DNA of 64,000 nt, from NCBI GenBank assembly GCA_964057225.1, contig OZ059898.1:14260001-14324000 (forward strand), given 5' to 3'. The notes under the pieces are model-generated. The model was given only the letters and a program-made list of their open reading frames with translations. It was not told the origin of the DNA and made no database searches. This document shows positions 35,462 through 47,223 of this stretch, piece after piece. Origin of the DNA: Auanema rhodensis. Lineage: Eukaryota; Animalia; Nematoda. The stretch's first letter is position 1; each line of letters starts with the position of its first letter. The position numbers were made by a program, and so were the translations under genes.

Positions 35462-38404
35462 TTATAATGCGTTTGAAATGGAATTATCAGAAACCACATA
35501 GCGGACTTCTGATGATGGAGGTACGGCGAACAAATCGGTAGAGGAAGACACGATCATCGATGGCTAAAATAAGAAATCACAAGTTATAACTGACAGCGGA
35601 ACGAAATCCAAATAATATATATCACAACATCGGAATTGCACAGGTCAACCAGCTATGTATATAAGGGAGAATGAAACTATAACTAAGAAAAAGCGACACA
35701 ATCACAATAAAAGAAAAAGCCTTCAGAGCTGCATGCCATCAACATCTGAGGAGTTATTATTATAAGCCCCACTGACCGCTCTTTGCCTCTCAGATGTAAA
35801 AATTTTGGCAAAAGGATAGCAACAAGGAGGTAAAGTTTGCTCCAAAGAAGGAATAGCATGTGTAAGTAGTGGTTTCATAAAGCTAAAACAATTAAATTAC
35901 ATGTAGTCAGCAATTCACACATACCATGAGTCAAAATTATACCATTTTCTTGGTAAGAAAGCTTTATCCCAAGGATTTGAGCCAGCAGGTCCATTGGGAG
36001 TAAAAGGTGTTTCAACAACTTGGACATCATCCACATCAGACTAAACAATAAATTTTTTTCCAGACAATATATTAAGAAAGAAATAGGCAGCGTACCGCAT
36101 TAGGTAAGCGTATATTATTTTCATTTTCTTCTAAATTGTTACTTCTCGAGTTATTAGCAGCCTCACCATGCCTAATAAATATCAAAATATATCCAAACAT
36201 GTTGTAGTAATATCTTACTTGATTCCTAAATAATCAATCATCCAAGATGTCATTCCTCCATTGAAAAATACAGTTATTAAGACAATTGTGGAAGTTGTGT
36301 CACATATAATCTTGAACATTCAAAATAATAAAAATAATGAAAACCTAAGATGATACCTGTCGATTTTCAGTTGCCGTATTTCGAGCAGCTAAAGCGAAAG
36401 CCATTGCACCACGAAGTCCAGAGAATACAATCATATGTTGATATCTAGAAAGAAATTATGAAGGAATATAAAGATAATAAGAAAAACCTTCTGGGAATAA
36501 TAGGACGACGTGAAATATTAATGATTGTACATAGTGGATAAACGAATAATGCACGAGCAAAAACTATAGAAATCTATAAGAAACAAAGTTTAATTCGTTT
36601 TAATTCTAAGAATAAGCTTACTAAAGCAAAGAAGATAAAAGCTATACTCCATTTTTGTTGATTACCAGCAATAACACTGACACCAATGTAACAGAAAATG
36701 AAACTTTCCAAAACAAAGGCAATCATCTGAATTATTTCAAAAATATTATTAAAAGGAGGTTCAATTCTACCTGGAAAAAGTTTTTGGTAGACCTTTGTGA
36801 TTCACGAGAAAGGTTATTATAAGTGTAATGAGCTTGAGCAATTCCACAGAATAAAACAGCCACAATTCCTAAAGAAATATCGATTATATAAACAAAATAT
36901 TTTACCAAATATACCTGTAAAGCCAACAACTTCTCCAATCAAGAAAGAAATATATGAAACTAGAACAAATAAAGAACTTTCTAATAACGGATAATCAGAT
37001 ATATGTGTCATCTTAGTTATAAGTGCATTTGTACATCCAATTACTGAACCTAATACACATGAACCTGAAAACAAGTTTGTAAGATGAAACAGATTTCAGG
37101 TAAAGCAAATACCAGCAAACGTTGAGAAGAACAACCACATAGCCGAGCCAAGTTCTGCCCAACTTAGTACAGAAGAGCCGGTAGAGAAATTATCGATGAT
37201 GCTATAAAGATACAGTTCAAAGAGTTTTCTGAAATTTTTGACTTACTTAGATAGTACGATAGCAACAGCATCATTCAAAGCACTTTCACCAAACACCAAA
37301 GCAAACAAATCTGCTTCCACTTTCATTTCAGAGAAAATAGAAATAACCGTTACTGAAAGTGGCAGCTTTTGAACGAACCCTGTAGCAGTAGCACATACCT
37401 GGATCTGTAGCTGATATCACAGCTCCAAAGAAAAGAAGCTCTTGGAATGAGAAACCCATTCCAAAAATTTTTGTAAGCACAAGCATTAGAGTTCTAAACA
37501 AATGAAATAAATTATAAAGATTTTATAAAATACCCGGTGGCTAAGCATGATACAGTAGTTCCAATGAAAACAAAAGCCAATATACTGCCTAAATTTGCAG
37601 AAAATATATACACCACGCATTCAGCGGAACGAACCAATATTTCGGAAAAAGTTGCGTTTCTTCAAGCTATATCCAGCATTGAATATTATAGGTGGAAGAA
37701 GAATATTGAAAAAAATTTCAGGAGAAAATGTACTCTGCAATGTGGTAGGTAAGTGATATCACCGAAAATAAACAGTGATAAGCTTACTTTCTGCTCGATT
37801 TTGTGTTCGTTATGCTTTTTGGTGTCAGCAAAAAATCCTTCGATTAGCTCATAATGGAACGATACCTTTTGCCCTCCCTCGGGTTTAACTTCTAATCTTT
37901 AATAAATTCAATTACAAACATGAACAACTAAAAATATATAGTCACACCTTAAATAATCAGGTGGTTCTGACACGATGGTATGGTTTTTCAGCATTACATC
38001 AAACGTTTGTGATTCAAGCAAACCAATATTGAAATATTTTATAAGTATACCAATCAGTAATCCTATAATCGACATATATTTGGTCTAAAGTCAACATTTT
38101 GAACTGTATGACCAACCGTAGATAAGCGTCAATCCTGACTCGTGTATGAAACGGAATCTATAATGTTTGAAGAACCATGCGGTCAACACGATTATGACCA
38201 TAACTGTGATATATGTTAGCAAAACTATAGTATCTAGATGATGCAGATTCTCTGCTCTCTGAAGAATTTCACGATTATCAACGATTGTTAAGATGAACTC
38301 ACTCTTTGTGCTGAATTTTCCAACTTGGACATATCTGATTGATGTGCAGCTATGACCAGTGTAGGCAAACACACCAATGAATGAATAATACCAAAGCGTA
38401 TCAT
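35462..38404 (-). CDS. nhx-5: Organellar Na+/H+ exchanger, NHE6/7/9 type; two alternative C-termini (stops at 35723 or 35462)
   Basis: [113 protein letters not shown]. Confidence 0.9.
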
Positions 38405-39294: not shown

Positions 39295-42200
39295 TTAGAA
39301 GTTAGCTTCGAAGTTCGCCATCATTTCCATTTGGCTAGTGAGATCTACGTCATTATCTCGTTCACGTTTCCTTCTTTCCTAAATAATGCCACCACTTAAC
39401 CCCGACTTATTTTTCAACTCCCAACCTGTTCCTTGAGCCTTAACAAGCGAGTTGCCTCGTCTTCTTCCATAGAAGTAACTTTCCTCCGTTCATCTTCACG
39501 CTGACGCCTTTCTTGTTCCATTCGCTATACAATTTTACAATGTTATAACATCAATATGACAGCTTGTGCTCTTACCATTCTGTCTTCCTTAACTTTTGTC
39601 TGTTTTTTCTGTTCATCTAGAGCATTATTTTTAGGTTCTTCTCTACTTGGTAATAACTGGTCCAATATGGAACCGCCTAATATCAAATTTTCAGTATAAC
39701 TTTTAGCCTCAAAATTAGATGTACCGATTCCGACGGGTATTACAGTCCTTGTATTTTGCAAAAGAGGTTTAGCCCCTTCATGTACAACTGAGGATGAGAT
39801 CGTTTTTGTGGATGGTGGACCTTCTGAAAGACACATACGTTACGACGATTATTCATTCCACAATTTTTTACCTGGGGCAACTGTAGTAGTTGCCGAGGTA
39901 GTAACTGCTTTGGGAGGGACCGGTGAAGGTGCCGTTGCTACCGGAGGTGGCATGGTAACCGGAGGATTAGCAGTCCCGTTCACTCCTGTTTTCACTGCTG
40001 GTGCCGGAACCATAGGCGCAGCAGGTGCAGTCGTCGTTGGCGGTAATACTGCTGGATTGGATCGGCCGTTTAATTTGCCACGAACTCGGTTCATCTCATC
40101 GTCACGGTGACCTGATGAAATGATAATAAGGTGTCGATAATAAAAAAACACCTTAATCATCTTATTTTGCGCAAATGAATCTCTGTCCGGAAACAAGTGA
40201 TGCAAATCCTTATTAGAATACGGAATAAATAATGTACAATAGCACAAGATTAATATCTCAAAAGATAACGTACAAATATACACAGGATAAAACGACAGTT
40301 GTGCTTAAAGGCTTTTGAAAAATATTAACTTAGCGGGCAAAGTTTGAGAACCAATAATGACCTTAGTAAATGCATGAGATTCTGAGATAAAAAATATATA
40401 ACACAGGGTACAGATAGCAGCGAATTATTAGTTACCCGAGATAAGGAATTCAGCAGCAAATATAAATTACACGGCAGCAGAACATCGTGAGCAATTTACA
40501 AGTAAAAAAATCTTGTATATACAGATAATTAACGGCAGAGAGGCGGGAAGGAGGCACTCATCTCTGCCGACCTTCCACCTCCCTGGAGCCGCCCGGACAG
40601 AGATTGGAGTGCCCCACTAGAGTCCCGCCTAACCTGATTCAGAATCCGAGGAATCACTATCCGAGTCTGAGGAAGAGCTTGATTCTCCTGAGGAAGATCC
40701 GGAGGACATGGGTGAGGCGATAGGCCGAGATGGTCCAGCTGGGCGAGGAGCATCAGGAACTGAATGAATAGTATAAGATATGAAAATGAATATTTATATT
40801 AGTTTATCAGGCTAAAAGTATATATAATATAAAATAATTTAAGTTAGAAGTTAGATTTGCAACATGCTAATCGAGCAGTACCATTCTTACTAGCAGCTTG
40901 ATGATTCACAGAACCTCCCAGCTTCTTAATCTTCTCTTCAAGATCACGTTTTCGCGCATCCATATCAGAGATGGATTTAGGAGCTGAAAAGTAAGCACTC
41001 CTTTGATCATCGGGAAATTCCCTCAAGAGCTTTCGGTATCTTTTTTTGAAAGGTTAGAACATGAAGGACGAAAATCGTGCAAATCAAAAATAGTGCCGAA
41101 TAGCGTTTATAAGCAAGGCGAATAAAGCCCTGAAGTAACATACCGCACGGCTTCCTAGTCTTCTTGGAGAGGTAGGATGAAACAAATGCTTCTAATTCCC
41201 TCAAAGTTGCCGGTTTCAATGTTTCAAAATCAATTTCTATCTCCTCAGGGTTGAAGTCCTAAGTTAATTGTTAAGAAAAAGAAAGTAATGCAAGTATTAC
41301 CGATAACGCTTCTCGACTCTCAATTATACTAACTACAAGATGGAGCTTGTCTCCAGGAAGTTTATTAATGTCCAAGCTCAGCTTGCGTTTTTCATCGTAG
41401 GTCATCGGTTCATTTGCTGCTTCATCAGATGAATCGAACTGATATCCTTCCCTCCAAGGTTTCGCGTGATTTGGTTCCACCTTCAGTAAACGAGACCAAA
41501 TTGGGATTTGTTCAAAAAACATACCTTGGGCTTGTTCTTCGAACCAGGTTTTCGACCCCTACCAGAATAAGGCTTGGGTGTCGGGGCAGGATTTAATAAT
41601 GCTGTTGGGGTCACTGATGGCCTAGCGGTCTGTGGTTTCATCTCACGCTTAATAACAGGTGAAACAGAAGATACGGGGCCATTGGACATTGGTGACTCTT
41701 CTTTAATTGGTCTAGCGCGTTGCATTAGCTAAACCAATAGAATTTAGAATGAGAACTTTAAAAACTTTCTAACCTTGAAAGCGGGACTAACTGTTAATCC
41801 CAATTCAGTGCAACTAGCGGCAACGAGGTTCACAATGTTGCCAGGAAGACTAGGCGCTGGAGTTTGATTCAACTTAGCCTCTTTCCGTTTAAACTTCAGT
41901 TCAAATAATTGGTTATTATATGCGCTGATCACTGCTAATTTTTCTTGCACTTTAACTTGCTGCGTTTGAATCTTAAGTTTCATAAGTTAAATGTTTAACC
42001 GGATGAAAAGAAAAGTACTTCATTTATAAGCACTTCTATTCGTTCATCGTCATCTGCTTCTAATATTGGTAAGGCGTTGACATTGGCAACTACATCCAGT
42101 GATCTCATGCTTGCACTTCCCGCCACTTCAGGTTCTTCCTCATCAACAGGTATAGTTAAGAACTGAGAAAAAAAAACATTTAAAAAGTTACAAACAGGCT

Positions 42201-44418
42201 ATATTACCTTTTCCTCGAATAATGCCAATAAAGATTGCCCATGTTCATGAACAATGTCGTTGGCAGGGTTATATTTGAAACAATTATTACAAACCTAGAA
42301 GACGTCGGTGACTTATATTTAAATGAATAAATTACATACCAAACGAACATCTTCGGCAAACTCTTGTGCATTTAAGTACATACGATTCTCAATCTTCTTT
42401 TTTATAGTTCCCAAATCCATAGGATGTGTTACAATATCATAATAGTCATATAGCTTCAGTCCATCAACATCTACAGGCTCCAAAAACGGCCAAGTGAAGT
42501 GCTGAACAATATTTTCAGTTTCAACCTATTGTTTCATTTTATTACCTTATATTTCTTTGAATGAAGCTCATTTATAACTTTTTGACAAAACTTCAAAGAC
42601 TCTGTTAATTTTCCTTTGAATCGAGGTTGTTGCTGGGACCAGTCAATAAAGGATGCTGGCTTCTTAATTGGTCTAGTAGATTCCCTACGTATACCTCCCT
42701 TTAATATGGCAACTATTAAACTAATATTTTTGAAAGGCGTTACCTTTGAAGAATCTTCTTCAGCACCAGTAGTGGTGTCTGCCTTTCGTTTAACACCTTT
42801 CTGAAGCTTTGAAGGTTGAACAGGAGGGACAACAATCTGGAAAACAGTCATCAGCTTTCATATGCGCAAGGTTTTTCTTACGGGAAGCTCTGATGTTGTT
42901 GGCTTTACATCTTCTAGAGATGGGGATACATCCATATATGCCACGCTTGAACTATCAGCGGCTCCCTTTTGAATCGAGGATTCGCGGGATGCTACAAAAT
43001 CTAATATCAAAAGCAATAAATAGATCCAAAATAAGTGCTACAGGCGCTTTTCTTTCTTCACTCTTTTTTTTTCACACCTCTTATTGCTGCGTTATGAAAA
43101 TGTTCTAGAACGTGATCGGCATCCCCGCTCCCACCTCGAACTACTGACGACGATTTCCTATTTCCTGCAGGGGTTGCTTTCTTGACATTAGCCTTTGGGC
43201 CACGTTTGGTAGAGGGTCGGGGAATCTCGACTTCCTAAATATATTTCTTTCATATTTTGATTCTAGGAAAGCCTGCTTGTCGTCTTCAATTCTACCTCAG
43301 GTGGCATACTTTGAATTAAATCTCTATACAGATTTTCTACATTTTTACACATAAGAGTAACATCATCCTCAGATTGATTGAAGCTGTAGCAGTTGTCGAA
43401 GACCGCTTGGAAATCCTAAGAAGAAAAAAACTCACTTCAGGTGGCATCTGCGCGACTGAGGTAAGGATGAATTGTTCGAGATCACGAGCCATAGTTACCA
43501 CACCATAATGAGGGGGGTTGTACGTGTAGCAATTGTTGAACATGGTCATAATGTCCTACAACATCGGAGAACCTCTAAGCCTTTCTAGCTCCGCAAGGGT
43601 ACAAAATTTCCTTATTTGGTAAGTCCCTCTAAGGGACACCGGAACTAATTTCGAACTGTGCGCGTTTCTTGAACAAAAATTTGGGTGATAATGGTGCAAT
43701 ATTGGGCTGAAGGTTCTCCGATACCACACCTTAACGCCGCTGATCTCGACCAACTCTACCTCCCACAGCCCGTGATTGGCAAGCATATTAAACCATTATT
43801 TTTCAAGAAAGGGTGATAAAAGCACAGAAAGATGGAACGGTACGTTCGAAGTTTGTTCCGGTGTTGACAAAAGAAGTATTGTTTTTCTTGAGAAGAATTT
43901 TAGCATGCTATACGTACCTCCATGCAATCCTTAGCGGAAAAATAATAGCAATTTTTCAATCTCTTCTCAATTGACTTCAAGTCCATAGGACGTTTAATAA
44001 CCTTGTGATAATCCTAAATATTAAACATCATTCTCTATCATGCTCTTAATTTCATACAGGGAGATGGAGCTTTAAAGTATCCACAGGAGCATTAAAAGGC
44101 CATGCGTGCTTATGTTTCATAGCCTCCTTTATAACCGTATTCAGCATATAATCCAATTGATTTGTATGCCTTGTAGGTTTTTTGATAGGGGGAATCACTC
44201 GAGGTTGAACGATTCCGTTAACTGGTTCCTACAAAATTAATTAATTCACGAACATATTTCATTTAAACCTGTCGGGGAGTTGCCCAGGGATTTTCCTGAA
44301 CCGTTGCATCAGGTCCATCTCCCTCATTCGAGTTATCATCTGTGGAGATGCCATTCGTGGCCGCATCTTCTGATGTGCTAACTCCATCAGTAACCTTTTC
44401 TGGATCCTTAGAGGACAT
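39295..44418 (-). CDS. bet-1: BET-family double-bromodomain protein (BRD2/3/4, fs(1)h orthologue) with ET domain, Ser-rich tract and C-terminal motif; alternatively spliced
   Basis: BD1: [31 protein letters not shown]2: [28 protein letters not shown]. Motif A: [13 protein letters not shown]: [43 protein letters not shown]: [17 protein letters not shown]. It could be a bet-2-like paralogue. Confidence 0.93.
43296..43415 (-). other. bet-1: bet-1 mutually exclusive exon B (BD1 C-terminal half, 40 aa)
   Basis: CTTAG|[40 protein letters not shown]|GTAGA, 120 nt, phase 0-0. Confidence 0.88.
43436..43555 (-). other. bet-1: bet-1 mutually exclusive exon A (BD1 C-terminal half, 40 aa)
   Basis: TGTAG|[40 protein letters not shown]|GTGAG, 120 nt, phase 0-0. 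Confidence 0.88.
43636..43864 (-). promoter_or_regulatory. Long nested intronic stem-loop upstream of the bet-1 exon pair
   Basis: Arms 43636-43656 and 43844-43864 pair at 19 of 21 positions. Nested inverted repeats: ctgtgc/gcacag, tttcttgaa/ttcaagaaa, caat..gggctg/cagccc..attg. Confidence 0.7.
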
Positions 44419-45435
44419 TACTGTCCAAAAGGCTGTAACTGAAGATATACAGTATTTGCTAAGGATAATTATAATATTTTAAAAGCACAAAAATTTAGTG
44501 AAGAAATAATGTAAAAATTTAAAAGAAAACAAGCTAAGAAAGAAGAACTAAATATAAAAATGAACTGTAATCCTTTAAAAGCTTGACGCTTTTTCAACGC
44601 GCGCGGCAAAATCCGCCGCGACGCTTGCAAAAGTAGAGAAATAGAGTAAGGGAGGAAGTTATGCATTAGAAACAATGAGGAGAGAACGAGGTAGTATGTA
44701 CGCATAAGAGGGTGCAGACGCACTACCTCTCTGCGTCTCTGACAGCGTCCCTTCCCTAAAATAAGGAAAAGGTATTTTTTAAAAACTGCTCACCATATAC
44801 GGCTATTATTGATGATATTTTCAAGTAACTGCTAAAAATAAAGAGAAATACTTCACTTGAAATCTTTATTAGGCAAAATGACAGTCAATATCCCAACTGA
44901 AAATAGAGGAGCGCAAACGGCAAGACACGCTCGACAATGGGGCCGCGCGCGGCAAGCTGACTAATTTAATGATTCTTCAAATTAAAACCATACAAAAATA
45001 TATCTACCATACAAAAAGACATCATATCTACGAAGAAAATCGTACTTCTTAACGCTTAATCCTTTCTGTTTATGGAAAACAAGTAGACAAAAGCTATAAC
45101 GACCGACCTAACGCTAAAACACCAGACGCTGATTGGATATAACGTAAGCAGACGCGCGCGTCCTTTGGCACAAGGCCAGCATATGTCATAGGCAGTATCT
45201 CGCAACGACAATGCTGCGGTATTTTAGATTACACTCAGAAATATTCAAATTTTAAATTTAAAAGTGAACTATATAAAAAAAGATCTCTATCTTATTTAGA
45301 AATATGATTATTTCCAACTAAAAAAATTTATTAATATTTCTTTAGTTGGTTTATAAATTATATATTTTTTATTTATTTCGTAAATAGAGAAAACTATAGA
45401 TTTTCGAAAAGTAAACTTAATTAAAATACCTACAG
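44419..45435. promoter_or_regulatory. Divergent bet-1/ruvb-2 promoter region, CpG-enriched
   Basis: Head-to-head genes. CGCGCGCGGCAA at 44598 and 44944, TCTGCGTCTCT at 44730, CGCAAC at 45201. Confidence 0.65.

Positions 45436-47223
<1,788 letters not shown>

What the first reader, a model, noticed from the sequence alone, without database searches (positions are those of the whole stretch)
43296..43555. Swappable acetyl-lysine pocket: bet-1 bromodomain 1 is completed by one of two alternative exons, BD1-type or BD2-type
Seen: after the exon ending ..[10 protein letters not shown] come two 120-nt phase-0 exons with canonical splice sites. Both encode helix B, the BC loop and helix C, and both end in MPPE. 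A = [40 protein letters not shown]; B = [40 protein letters not shown]. Both keep the acetyl-lysine-anchoring Asn. Established: the BC loop is the main BD1/BD2 selectivity determinant (BRD4 BD1 YNKPGDDI with Asp144; BD2 YNPPDHEV with His437). Exon B is BD1-like (Asp-Asp). Exon A is BD2-like (NPP, an aromatic Tyr at the His position, VVxMAR). Inference: splicing reprograms one reader pocket, changing histone or transcription-factor preference and BET-inhibitor sensitivity by tissue or stage. I know of no such switch in vertebrate BET genes. I recall similar sequence variants in other nematode BET proteins, so it may be conserved, but I cannot confirm prior description.
Basis: partly seen in the sequence, partly recalled or inferred. 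Interest (0 to 1): 0.9.

Follow-up and report, generated by a model that had tools for sequence, protein, structure and literature searches.

The report
Mutually exclusive exons in BET bromodomain
A nematode BET chromatin-reader gene completes its first bromodomain with one of two alternative 120-base exons; transcripts confirm the switch, but the same exon pair was already published for C. elegans bet-2, and only its functional meaning is still open.

Summary
On the minus strand, two 120-nt phase-0 exons (A 43555-43436, B 43415-43296) follow the exon that ends at 43918. Only 20 nt separate them.

Transcript contigs from four runs show the joints e3>A, e3>B, A>e5 and B>e5. None joins A to B or skips both. 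The B:A depth ratio is about 60:40 in three runs and about 100:0 in the fourth.

The pair is ancient. A- and B-type exons, in the same order and with 18-54 nt spacers, occur across rhabditid nematodes (Rhabditina, Tylenchina, Spirurina). All B exons form one clade. Each type is 62-67% conserved between species, but only about 34% identical to its partner.

It is not new. Kuroyanagi et al. 2014 validated C. elegans bet-2 exons 3a/3b: 120 nt each, 35% amino-acid identity, a 37-nt intron, steric interference.

The label "BD1-type versus BD2-type" holds only for a few BC-loop residues. As whole exons, both are BD1-derived. A is the conservative copy with a Pro-Pro-x-aromatic rim. B is a nematode-specific copy with an acidic Glu-Asp-Asp rim.

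The different ligand or inhibitor preference is a plausible inference but is untested.

The parts
44269..44418 (-). Exon 1 of the BET gene (ATG at 44418-44416), 150 nt
   Evidence: Translation. Joint 44268/44227 (40-nt intron) in all four runs.
44058..44228 (-). Exon 2, 171 nt. Encodes the N-terminal extension, helix Z and the start of the ZA loop of BD1 (contains WPF).
   Evidence: joint 44057/44012, 44-nt intron. 84-86% identical to the Heterorhabditis and Haemonchus orthologs.
43918..44013 (-). Exon 3, 96 nt, constitutive. Encodes the ZA loop, helix A and the first turns of helix B. Ends ...KDCME.
   Evidence: Pfam Bromodomain positions 28-56, E 2e-7. Its donor joins either A or B.
43556..43917 (-). 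Intron 3 (362 nt) upstream of exon A. By far the longest intron in this part of the gene, so a likely site of regulatory elements.
   Evidence: Joint 43917/43554. A low-depth unspliced contig covers 43528-43946. No Rfam match and no repeat within the window.
43436..43555 (-). Exon A, 120 nt, phase 0. The conservative BD1 copy, with BC-loop rim N-P-P-H-Y-G-V.
   Evidence: Joints e3>A and A>e5 in runs X1-X3. 85% identical to the Heterorhabditis A block.
43416..43435 (-). 20-nt spacer GTGAGTTTTTTTCTTCTTAG. It holds the donor of exon A and the pyrimidine tract plus AG of exon B back to back, and is too short to be an intron.
   Evidence: No joint across it in any run. The shortest confirmed intron in the gene is 40 nt. 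The C. elegans minimum is about 40 nt.
43296..43415 (-). Exon B, 120 nt, phase 0. The nematode-specific copy, with BC-loop rim N-Q-S-E-D-D-V and helix C M-C-K-N-V-E-N.
   Evidence: Joints e3>B and B>e5 in all four runs. 80% identical to the Heterorhabditis B block. Falls in the B clade, support 98/99.
43078..43234 (-). Exon 5, 157 nt, the common acceptor for A and B (EVEIPRP...).
   Evidence: Joints 43233/43295 and 43233/43435. Translation.
42205..42504 (-). Exons encoding bromodomain 2 (BC loop Y-N-P-A-N-D-I-V).
   Evidence: Frame translations. tblastn with P0001 and P0179.
41181..41483 (-). ET-domain coding region.
   Evidence: tblastn with P0001 residues 624-711, 66% identity. P0001 and its relatives carry PF17035.
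37527..38039 (-). Part of the next gene downstream, a Na+/H+ exchanger homolog (a synteny marker, not part of the switch).
   Evidence: tblastn with P0001 residues 923-1067, 50% identity. P0001 carries PF00999. The same neighbour lies next to the C. angaria gene.

Best explanation
This is a pair of tandemly duplicated, mutually exclusive exons in a nematode BET (double bromodomain + ET) gene. It is the counterpart of C. elegans bet-2 exons 3a/3b.

Shown:
- Every transcript form seen carries exon A or exon B, never both and never neither.
- The A:B ratio differs between samples.
- The swapped 40 residues are the last 12 residues of helix B, the BC loop, helix C and the MPPE tail of bromodomain 1. 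The models used for this mapping are of the Parascaris isoform pair.
- Both exon lineages are conserved across Rhabditina, Tylenchina and Spirurina.

Inferred mechanism of exclusivity: the 20-nt spacer is too short to be spliced out (steric interference). It also places the 5' splice site of A directly against the pyrimidine tract and AG of B. U1 snRNP on A's donor and U2AF on B's acceptor should therefore exclude each other, which gives a binary toggle.

Inferred function: the switch yields two BD1 readers built on one scaffold. By alignment to BRD4, the swapped block supplies the residues at positions Cys136, Tyr139, Asn140, Asp144, Asp145, Ile146 and Met149. A and B share Cys, Asn, Val and Met. 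They differ at the rim: A has P-P-(H/E)-(Y/F)-G, B has Q-(N/S)-E-D-D. They also differ at the Tyr139 position (Tyr or Phe in A, Phe in B) and at several conserved helix-C surface positions (B: Cys, Asn, Asn, Arg). Different acetyl-peptide, partner or inhibitor preferences are therefore likely.
For: Anatomy.

Transcripts: the joints 43917>43554, 43917>43414, 43435>43233 and 43295>43233 have GT..AG ends. There is no A>B joint and no e3>e5 joint. Depths of B versus A are 93 vs 61-66, 43 vs 30-34 and 33 vs 22-24 in X1-X3, and 83 vs 0 in X4.

Same part of the domain: (BRD4 128-167 and 421-460).

Folding: the Parascaris isoform pair gives complete four-helix bromodomains, pLDDT 95.8 and 94.9. Both match human BD1 structures at TM about 0.9.

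Conservation: tandem A+B blocks or A/B isoform pairs occur in more than 20 nematode species. Isoform pairs in Parascaris and Mesorhabditis differ only within residues 161-199. Genomic spacers are 18, 20, 31, 32, 44 and 47 nt, and read-through ORFs imply 24, 27, 36 and 54 nt. The B clade has 98/99 support. Identity between species is 61.7% for A and 67.0% for B, against 33.5% between A and B. Between the window and Heterorhabditis, the constitutive BD1 part is 88% identical, A 85% and B 80%.

Literature: C. elegans bet-2 3a/3b are 120 nt each, 35.0% aa identity, with a 37-nt intron. They were shown to be exclusive by RT-PCR and assigned to steric interference.
Against: The transcript evidence is assembled contigs, not raw reads, from four runs of a single study whose library kind is only guessed to be RNA. 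Contigs drop rare forms, so low-level double inclusion, double skipping or spacer retention cannot be excluded. Absence of A in X4 means 'below assembly level', not zero. The sample types are coded, so tissue or stage control is not shown.

Spacers of 44-54 nt in Enterobius, Dirofilaria and one unnamed contig may be long enough to splice, and a Brugia model (Bm10119 isoform c) carries A+B in tandem. Steric interference may therefore not be the whole mechanism in every lineage.

The U1/U2AF toggle and every functional difference between the two pockets are inference. I could not retrieve the C. elegans bet-2 sequence, so orthology rests on identical architecture plus the literature. The C. angaria gene in the same synteny has only an A exon.
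Confidence: 0.85

Rival explanations
1. The switch matters mainly through the exposed face of helix C, a partner-binding or intramolecular surface, and not through acetyl-lysine pocket selectivity. This rival overlaps with the best explanation rather than excluding it.
For: In exon B the helix-C positions are almost invariant across 22 taxa: M-C-(K/Q)-N-(V/I)-E-N-x-Y-R-(E/D)-K. These include residues that are not pocket residues by alignment to BRD4 (block positions 23, 25, 28, 31, 32). Exon A keeps a different and looser pattern (A-(K/R)-x-L-E-x-x-x-L). The gatekeeper (Val), Asn, Cys and Met are the same in both exons.
Against: The BC-loop rim, including the positions of BRD4 Asp144 and Asp145, also differs consistently between the two lineages. 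From my own knowledge, this rim is a recognised determinant of BET ligand selectivity. No partner is known.
Confidence: 0.3
2. The two exons are biochemically interchangeable. The pair is kept only because expression control has been divided between them (regulatory subfunctionalisation), so the splice choice has no consequence for the reader function.
For: Both keep all the core pocket residues (Cys, Asn, Val, Met). Both fold equally well in models. The C. angaria gene manages with A alone. One paper reports no RNAi phenotype for C. elegans bet-2.
Against: Each lineage has kept its own diagnostic residues across three rhabditid suborders, while A and B stay only about 34% identical. Interchangeable copies would be expected to drift, be homogenised or be lost more often.
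Confidence: 0.15
3. One of the two exons is a decayed or unused duplicate, or the two are ordinary cassette exons that can be included together.
For: Many public gene models include both blocks in tandem. Run X4 shows no A form.
Against: Both exons are spliced into transcripts in this organism. Both have open frames, canonical splice sites and strong cross-species conservation. No A-B joint was seen, and the 20-nt spacer is half the smallest confirmed intron. The tandem models are automatic predictions. Where isoform pairs are annotated, they are alternatives.
Confidence: 0.02

Closest known systems
C. elegans bet-2 (WBGene00010199) exons 3a/3b, a mutually exclusive pair (Kuroyanagi, Takei and Suzuki 2014, Worm 3:e28459, PMC4165533)
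   Same: Both are in a BET double-bromodomain gene. Both have two adjacent homologous exons of exactly 120 nt (3n). The aa identity between partners is 35% in both. Both have an intervening segment below the roughly 40-nt intron minimum (37 nt there, 20 nt here). Exclusive use was shown experimentally there and by transcript contigs here.
   Different: The species differs: the window comes from a clade V rhabditid whose closest sampled relative is Heterorhabditis. The spacer is even shorter. The paper lists the pair as a splicing case only and says nothing about which part of the bromodomain is exchanged, about conservation, or about function. I could not fetch the C. elegans sequence to align it directly.
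Other steric-interference exon pairs in C. elegans: let-2 exons 9/10 (30-nt spacer), egl-15 exons 5B/5A (14 nt), gly-5 9b/9c, gly-6 8a/8b
   Same: Homologous 3n-length exons separated by a segment too short to be excised, so double inclusion is physically blocked and NMD is not needed.
   Different: The proteins are unrelated (collagen IV, FGF receptor, GalNAc transferases). Here the exchanged module is half of an acetyl-lysine reader pocket.
Vertebrate BET BD1 versus BD2 (BRD4 Asp144/Ile146 versus His437/Val439)
   Same: The same structural positions are varied. Exon B has Asp-Asp as in BD1. Exon A has Pro-Pro and an aromatic residue where BD2 has Pro-Pro and His.
   Different: In vertebrates the two pocket types are separate domains of one protein, not splice alternatives. 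As whole blocks, both nematode exons are BD1-derived. Both have Val at the gatekeeper position. Exon A has Tyr/Phe rather than His, and Ser in strongylids. Nematode BD2 itself has Asp and Ile at these positions.
Mammalian BRD2 and BRD3 poison exons inside bromodomain-coding regions (PMC10789245)
   Same: Alternative splicing inside the bromodomain-coding part of a BET gene.
   Different: Those exons trigger unproductive splicing and NMD to set expression level. They do not encode an alternative pocket. That paper reports no annotated NMD isoforms for BRDT or fly fs(1)h and mentions no coding exon swap in any BET gene.

Membership tests
Homologous mutually exclusive exon cluster, steric-interference class | Adjacent exons of the same length and phase that are homologous to each other | tested here: met
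   120 nt each, phase 0, 50% nt and 35% aa identity, reciprocal tblastn E 2e-6
Homologous mutually exclusive exon cluster, steric-interference class | Mature transcripts contain exactly one exon of the cluster | tested here: met
   Four single-inclusion joints seen; no A-B joint and no double skip in four runs. Caveat: these are contigs, which hide rare forms.
Homologous mutually exclusive exon cluster, steric-interference class | Intervening segment shorter than the minimal spliceable intron | tested here: met
   20 nt against 40 nt for the smallest confirmed intron in the same gene and about 40 nt in C. elegans. Causality was not tested.
BET family (two bromodomains plus ET domain) | Two bromodomains with the conserved Asn, followed by an ET domain | tested here: met
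   Pfam PF00439 on exon 3, A and B. BD2 and ET regions found by translation and tblastn to P0001 and P0179. Orthologs carry PF00439 and PF17035.
Ortholog of C. elegans bet-2 | Same exon pair: size, phase, divergence, short spacer | tested here: met
   Compared with Table 1 of PMC4165533
Ortholog of C. elegans bet-2 | Direct sequence or tree orthology to C. elegans BET-2 rather than BET-1 or F13C5.2 | not tested
   No C. elegans protein came back from the three word-indexed searches. The C. angaria gene with the same Na+/H+-exchanger neighbour is only 55% identical in BD1 and has no B exon. That nhx-5 lies next to bet-2 in C. elegans is my recollection; a search of the paper library for these gene names found nothing.
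Vertebrate BD2-type pocket (claimed for exon A) | His at the BRD4-437 position, Pro-Pro after the Asn, Val gatekeeper, and overall closer to BD2 | tested here: not met
   Pro-Pro and Val are present. Position 437 is Tyr here (Y15/F4/S3 across taxa). Mean identity is 49.2% to BD1 against 40.8% to BD2, and A groups with BD1 in the tree.
Vertebrate BD1-type pocket (claimed for exon B) | Asp144-Asp145, Ile146 gatekeeper, Lys-Pro after the Asn | tested here: inconclusive
   Asp-Asp is present and nearly invariant (D21/22, D22/22). The gatekeeper is Val, and the loop reads Gln-Ser/Asn instead of Lys-Pro. B is a separate long-branch clade.

The most novel reading that the evidence does not exclude
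Across rhabditid nematodes, one BET gene encodes two pharmacologically and biochemically distinct BD1 pockets, a Pro-Pro-aromatic rim and an acidic Glu-Asp-Asp rim. A 20-nt U1/U2AF toggle selects between them in a tissue-, sex- or stage-specific way. This matters because JQ1 kills adult Brugia in vitro (PMC6890932).
Probability: 0.35. Interest if true: 0.6.

Novelty: already known. Interest (0 to 1): 0.35.

Why it matters
The splicing event itself has been in the literature since 2014 for C. elegans bet-2, so it is not a discovery.

This analysis adds three points that I did not find in the searchable literature:
- The exchanged module is half of the acetyl-lysine pocket of BD1.
- Both exon lineages have been kept, with their own diagnostic rim and helix-C residues, across at least three rhabditid suborders, including the major animal and plant parasites.
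- Many public gene models wrongly string both exons together, which gives a BD1 with a duplicated helix B/C.

If the two pockets differ in ligand or drug binding, this would be a rare case of a chromatin reader retuned by splicing. It would also bear on BET inhibitors as anthelmintic leads, because a compound would have to hit both pocket variants.

Tried and rejected
- I could not pass the window's own spliced protein to the protein tools, because no reference exists for a spliced product and I did not type long sequences. Homolog searches therefore started from the 40-aa exon A and then used database proteins. The structure models are of the Parascaris isoform pair, not the window's protein.
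- Three word-indexed protein searches returned no C. elegans protein, so the C. elegans comparison rests on the paper.
- Two contig look-ups found no record (Mesorhabditis and Steinernema). One had no DNA.
- Taxon names for the short read-through ORFs were not available.
- An Rfam scan of 43000-45300 found nothing. Intron 3 is not repeated in the window or in the fetched loci.
- dN/dS was not attempted. The only DNA-level relatives are so distant that synonymous sites would be saturated. Amino-acid conservation relative to the constitutive exons was used instead.
- Literature searches for a bromodomain BC-loop exon swap, for other bet-2 splicing work, and for mutually exclusive exons in bromodomain genes found nothing beyond Kuroyanagi 2014.
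- The idea that exon A was copied from BD2 was considered and rejected on the tree and the identity panel.
Full report
**1. What is in the sequence**

The gene lies on the minus strand. I read 43100-44100 and then 39500-46500 and translated the pieces.

| Feature | Coordinates | Size |
|---|---|---|
| Exon 1 (ATG at 44418) | 44418-44269 | 150 nt |
| Exon 2 | 44228-44058 | 171 nt |
| Exon 3 (ends ...KDCME) | 44013-43918 | 96 nt |
| Intron 3 | 43917-43556 | 362 nt |
| Exon A | 43555-43436 | 120 nt |
| Spacer | 43435-43416 | 20 nt |
| Exon B | 43415-43296 | 120 nt |
| Intron B to exon 5 | 43295-43235 | 61 nt |
| Exon 5 | 43234-43078 | 157 nt |

- They share 60/120 nt and 14/40 aa (and my count), and find each other by tblastn at E 2e-6.
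- Both map to the same stretch of the Pfam Bromodomain model, positions 60 to 76/82 of 84.
- Both align to BRD4 residues 128-167 (BD1) and 421-460 (BD2).
- Further downstream the gene encodes a second bromodomain and an ET domain, so it is a BET-family gene.
It consists of a GTGAGT donor followed directly by a T-rich tract and AG.

**2. Are both exons used?**

Four runs of one study hold this locus as spliced contigs. I laid them on 42700-44500.

- All runs confirm the constitutive introns of 40, 44 and 45 nt.
- At the exon pair, four joints are seen, each with GT..AG ends: e3>A (43917/43554), e3>B (43917/43414), A>e5 (43435/43233) and B>e5 (43295/43233).
- No contig joins A to B, and none joins e3 to e5.

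| Run | Depth of B form | Depth of A form |
|---|---|---|
| X1 | 93 | 61-66 |
| X2 | 43 | 30-34 |
| X3 | 33 | 22-24 |
| X4 | 83 | none |

- In X4 a single contig runs e3-B-e5 with no A branch.
- So both exons are expressed, they are alternatives, and the ratio is not fixed.
- Limits: these are assembled contigs, the RNA label is a guess (the spliced joints show they are transcripts), all runs come from one study, the sample types are coded, and contigs hide rare forms.

**3. Why they exclude each other**

- Reading through the spacer shifts the frame into a stop. Removing it as an intron would keep the frame.
- The spacer is only 20 nt, while the smallest confirmed intron in this gene is 40 nt. 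The C. elegans minimum is about 40 nt.
- The best-supported mechanism is therefore steric interference: the spacer cannot be spliced.
- I add an inference. A's donor and B's pyrimidine tract plus AG are back to back, so U1 snRNP on one and U2AF on the other should exclude each other. This would make the choice binary.
- What prevents skipping of both exons (which would stay in frame) is not explained.

**4. Relatives**

A phmmer search with exon A against 1.84 billion representative proteins and two region-restricted searches gave many nematode BET proteins. Names came from cluster look-ups.

- *Models with both blocks in tandem.* These are Heterorhabditis bacteriophora, Strongylus, Nippostrongylus, Enterobius, Syphacia, Thelazia, Elaeophora, Dirofilaria, Toxocara, Anisakis and Gnathostoma. 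H. bacteriophora is the closest: A 34/40 and B 32/40 identical, and the constitutive BD1 part 88%. The tandem arrangement is evidently a prediction artefact.
- *Models with one block only.* A-type: Ancylostoma, Diploscapter, Meloidogyne, Steinernema, Acrobeloides, Wuchereria. B-type: Haemonchus, Necator, Angiostrongylus, Ascaris, Brugia, Loa, Globodera, Bursaphelenchus.
- *Annotated isoform pairs.* In Parascaris univalens and Mesorhabditis spiculigera, two isoforms of equal length differ only within residues 161-199.
- *Read-through ORFs.* Short ORFs called on unannotated contigs start at a Met inside exon A and read through in-frame spacers of 18, 24, 27, 36 and 54 nt into a B-type exon. The spacers begin Val-Ser (GTnAGT), and most end Phe-Gln (TTTCAG or a similar xxxCAG).
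- *Genomic loci.* They give spacers of 18 nt (a Logan contig), 31 nt (Pristionchus mayeri), 32 nt (Bursaphelenchus xylophilus), 44 nt (Enterobius) and 47 nt (Dirofilaria), always in the order A then B.
- *An exception.* The Caenorhabditis angaria gene has an A exon only. Like the window's gene, it is followed by a Na+/H+ exchanger gene. A 53-nt intron leads straight to the next exon, and tblastn finds no B.

**5. Evolution of the two exons**

- A maximum-likelihood tree of 56 forty-residue blocks puts all 22 B exons in one clade (support 98/99) on a long stem.
- The A exons sit with non-nematode BD1 blocks.
- Non-nematode BD2 blocks form their own clade (99/100). Forty columns resolve little else.
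- Over 17 taxa with both exons, mean identity between species is 61.7% for A and 67.0% for B. Within a species, A and B are 33.5% identical (range 30-40%).
- The duplication therefore predates the split of Rhabditina, Tylenchina and Spirurina, and both copies have been under constraint since.
- Whether it is older (Plectida, Enoplea) could not be tested.

**6. BD1-type versus BD2-type**

*Whole blocks*
- Exon A is closer to non-nematode BD1 (49.2%) than to BD2 (40.8%). Exon B likewise (37.3% vs 29.9%).
- Against BRD4 alone, A scores 30.0 bits on BD2 and 25.0 on BD1. Its best single-domain PDB match is BRD3 BD1. B scores 23.4 on BD1 and 14.2 on BD2.

*Rim positions (numbering by alignment to BRD4 BD1/BD2; counts are taxa)*

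| BRD4 BD1/BD2 residue | Exon A | Exon B |
|---|---|---|
| Lys141/Pro434 | Pro 21/24 | Gln 19/22 |
| Pro142/Pro435 | Pro 22/24 | Asn/Ser/Met |
| Gly143/Asp436 | His or Glu | Glu 20/22 |
| Asp144/His437 | Tyr 15, Phe 4, Ser 3 | Asp 21/22 |
| Asp145/Glu438 | Gly 16/24 | Asp 22/22 |
| Ile146/Val439 | Val 17, Ile 7 | Val 22/22 |
| Tyr139 | Tyr 18, Phe 6 | Phe 21/22 |
| Ala150 | Ala | Cys 21/22 |

The label "BD2-type" still overstates it.
- The nematodes' own BD2 has Asp and Ile at the 437 and 439 positions (the window reads Y-N-P-A-N-D-I-V).

*Structure models*
- AlphaFold models were made of the Parascaris BD1-A and BD1-B isoforms. The window's spliced protein could not be submitted by reference.
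- Both are complete bromodomains, with pLDDT 95.8 and 94.9, helix B at 85-102, the BC loop at 103-107 and helix C at 108-124. The swapped block starts at model residue 91.
- The top 50 structural matches of both models are human BD1 domains, TM about 0.9 and rmsd 0.8-1.0 Å.

**7. Prior knowledge**

- Kuroyanagi, Takei and Suzuki (Worm 2014; PMC4165533) list bet-2 exons 3a/3b among 29 mutually exclusive clusters of C. elegans validated by RT-PCR.
- Their data for the pair: 120 nt each, 45.8% nt and 35.0% aa identity, a 37-nt intervening intron, similar read support (35 and 32), and no dependence on NMD.
- They place it among five clusters whose intron is too short to be excised. They note that the intron is retained rather than both exons being included.
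- The paper does not say what the exons encode within the bromodomain.
- I found no paper that discusses a bromodomain pocket swap by splicing.
- A paper on mammalian BRD2/BRD3 describes poison exons, not coding alternatives.
- BET inhibition by JQ1 kills adult Brugia malayi in vitro, and that paper names bet-1, bet-2 and F13C5.2 as the C. elegans BET genes.
- The window's gene is best read as the bet-2 counterpart, not bet-1. Direct orthology to the C. elegans protein was not tested.

**8. Verdict**

- The thing itself is an already published kind of event in the orthologous gene family.
- Two points remain open and moderately interesting: the functional meaning of exchanging half of the acetyl-lysine pocket, and its deep conservation in free-living and parasitic nematodes.

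Noticed in passing
window 42991-43000 (minus strand), acceptor after the donor at 43078: Two in-frame tandem acceptors 9 nt apart. Runs X2 and X3 use 42991 and run X4 uses 43000, which would add three residues (Asp-Phe-Val) before ASRESS. X4 is also the run without the exon A form, so the two choices may be coupled or sample-specific.
   Followed up: partly
window 43528-43946: A low-depth contig (4.5-8.6, against about 100-400 for the neighbouring exons) runs unspliced from exon 3 through intron 3 into exon A in all four runs. It is either retained intron 3 or pre-mRNA.
   Followed up: no
L001:2616-2790 (Caenorhabditis angaria, GCA_947459285.1): This BET gene shares the Na+/H+-exchanger neighbour with the window's gene. 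It has an A-type exon followed by a 53-nt intron and then the common exon, and no B-type exon anywhere in the locus. Its BD1 is only 55% identical to the window's.
   Followed up: partly
L006:1976-2247 (Bursaphelenchus xylophilus) and L005:2356-2626 (Pristionchus mayeri): B. xylophilus exon A has Cys where the acetyl-lysine-anchoring Asn should be (Y-C-P-P). P. mayeri exon A is followed by GCGAGT (a GC donor), and its exon B has Ala at the otherwise conserved Asn of F-x-N-C.
   Followed up: no
Public protein models P0001, P0003, P0167-P0171, P0183-P0186, P0175, P0174: Many automatic nematode gene models include both exons in tandem, which gives a BD1 with a duplicated helix B/C. The Globodera model joins a partial A to B. 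The Heterorhabditis model is also fused to the downstream Na+/H+ exchanger. A Brugia model (Bm10119 isoform c) starts inside A and continues into B.
   Followed up: partly
window 42205-42300 and BD2 of P0001, P0042, P0171, P0179: Nematode BD2 domains carry Asp and Ile at the positions of vertebrate BD2 His437 and Val439. The residues used to tell BD1 from BD2 in vertebrates therefore do not apply in nematodes.
   Followed up: partly
window 37527-38039 (minus strand): The next gene downstream is a Na+/H+ exchanger homolog. The same gene order is seen in C. angaria and is implied by the fused Heterorhabditis model.
   Followed up: partly
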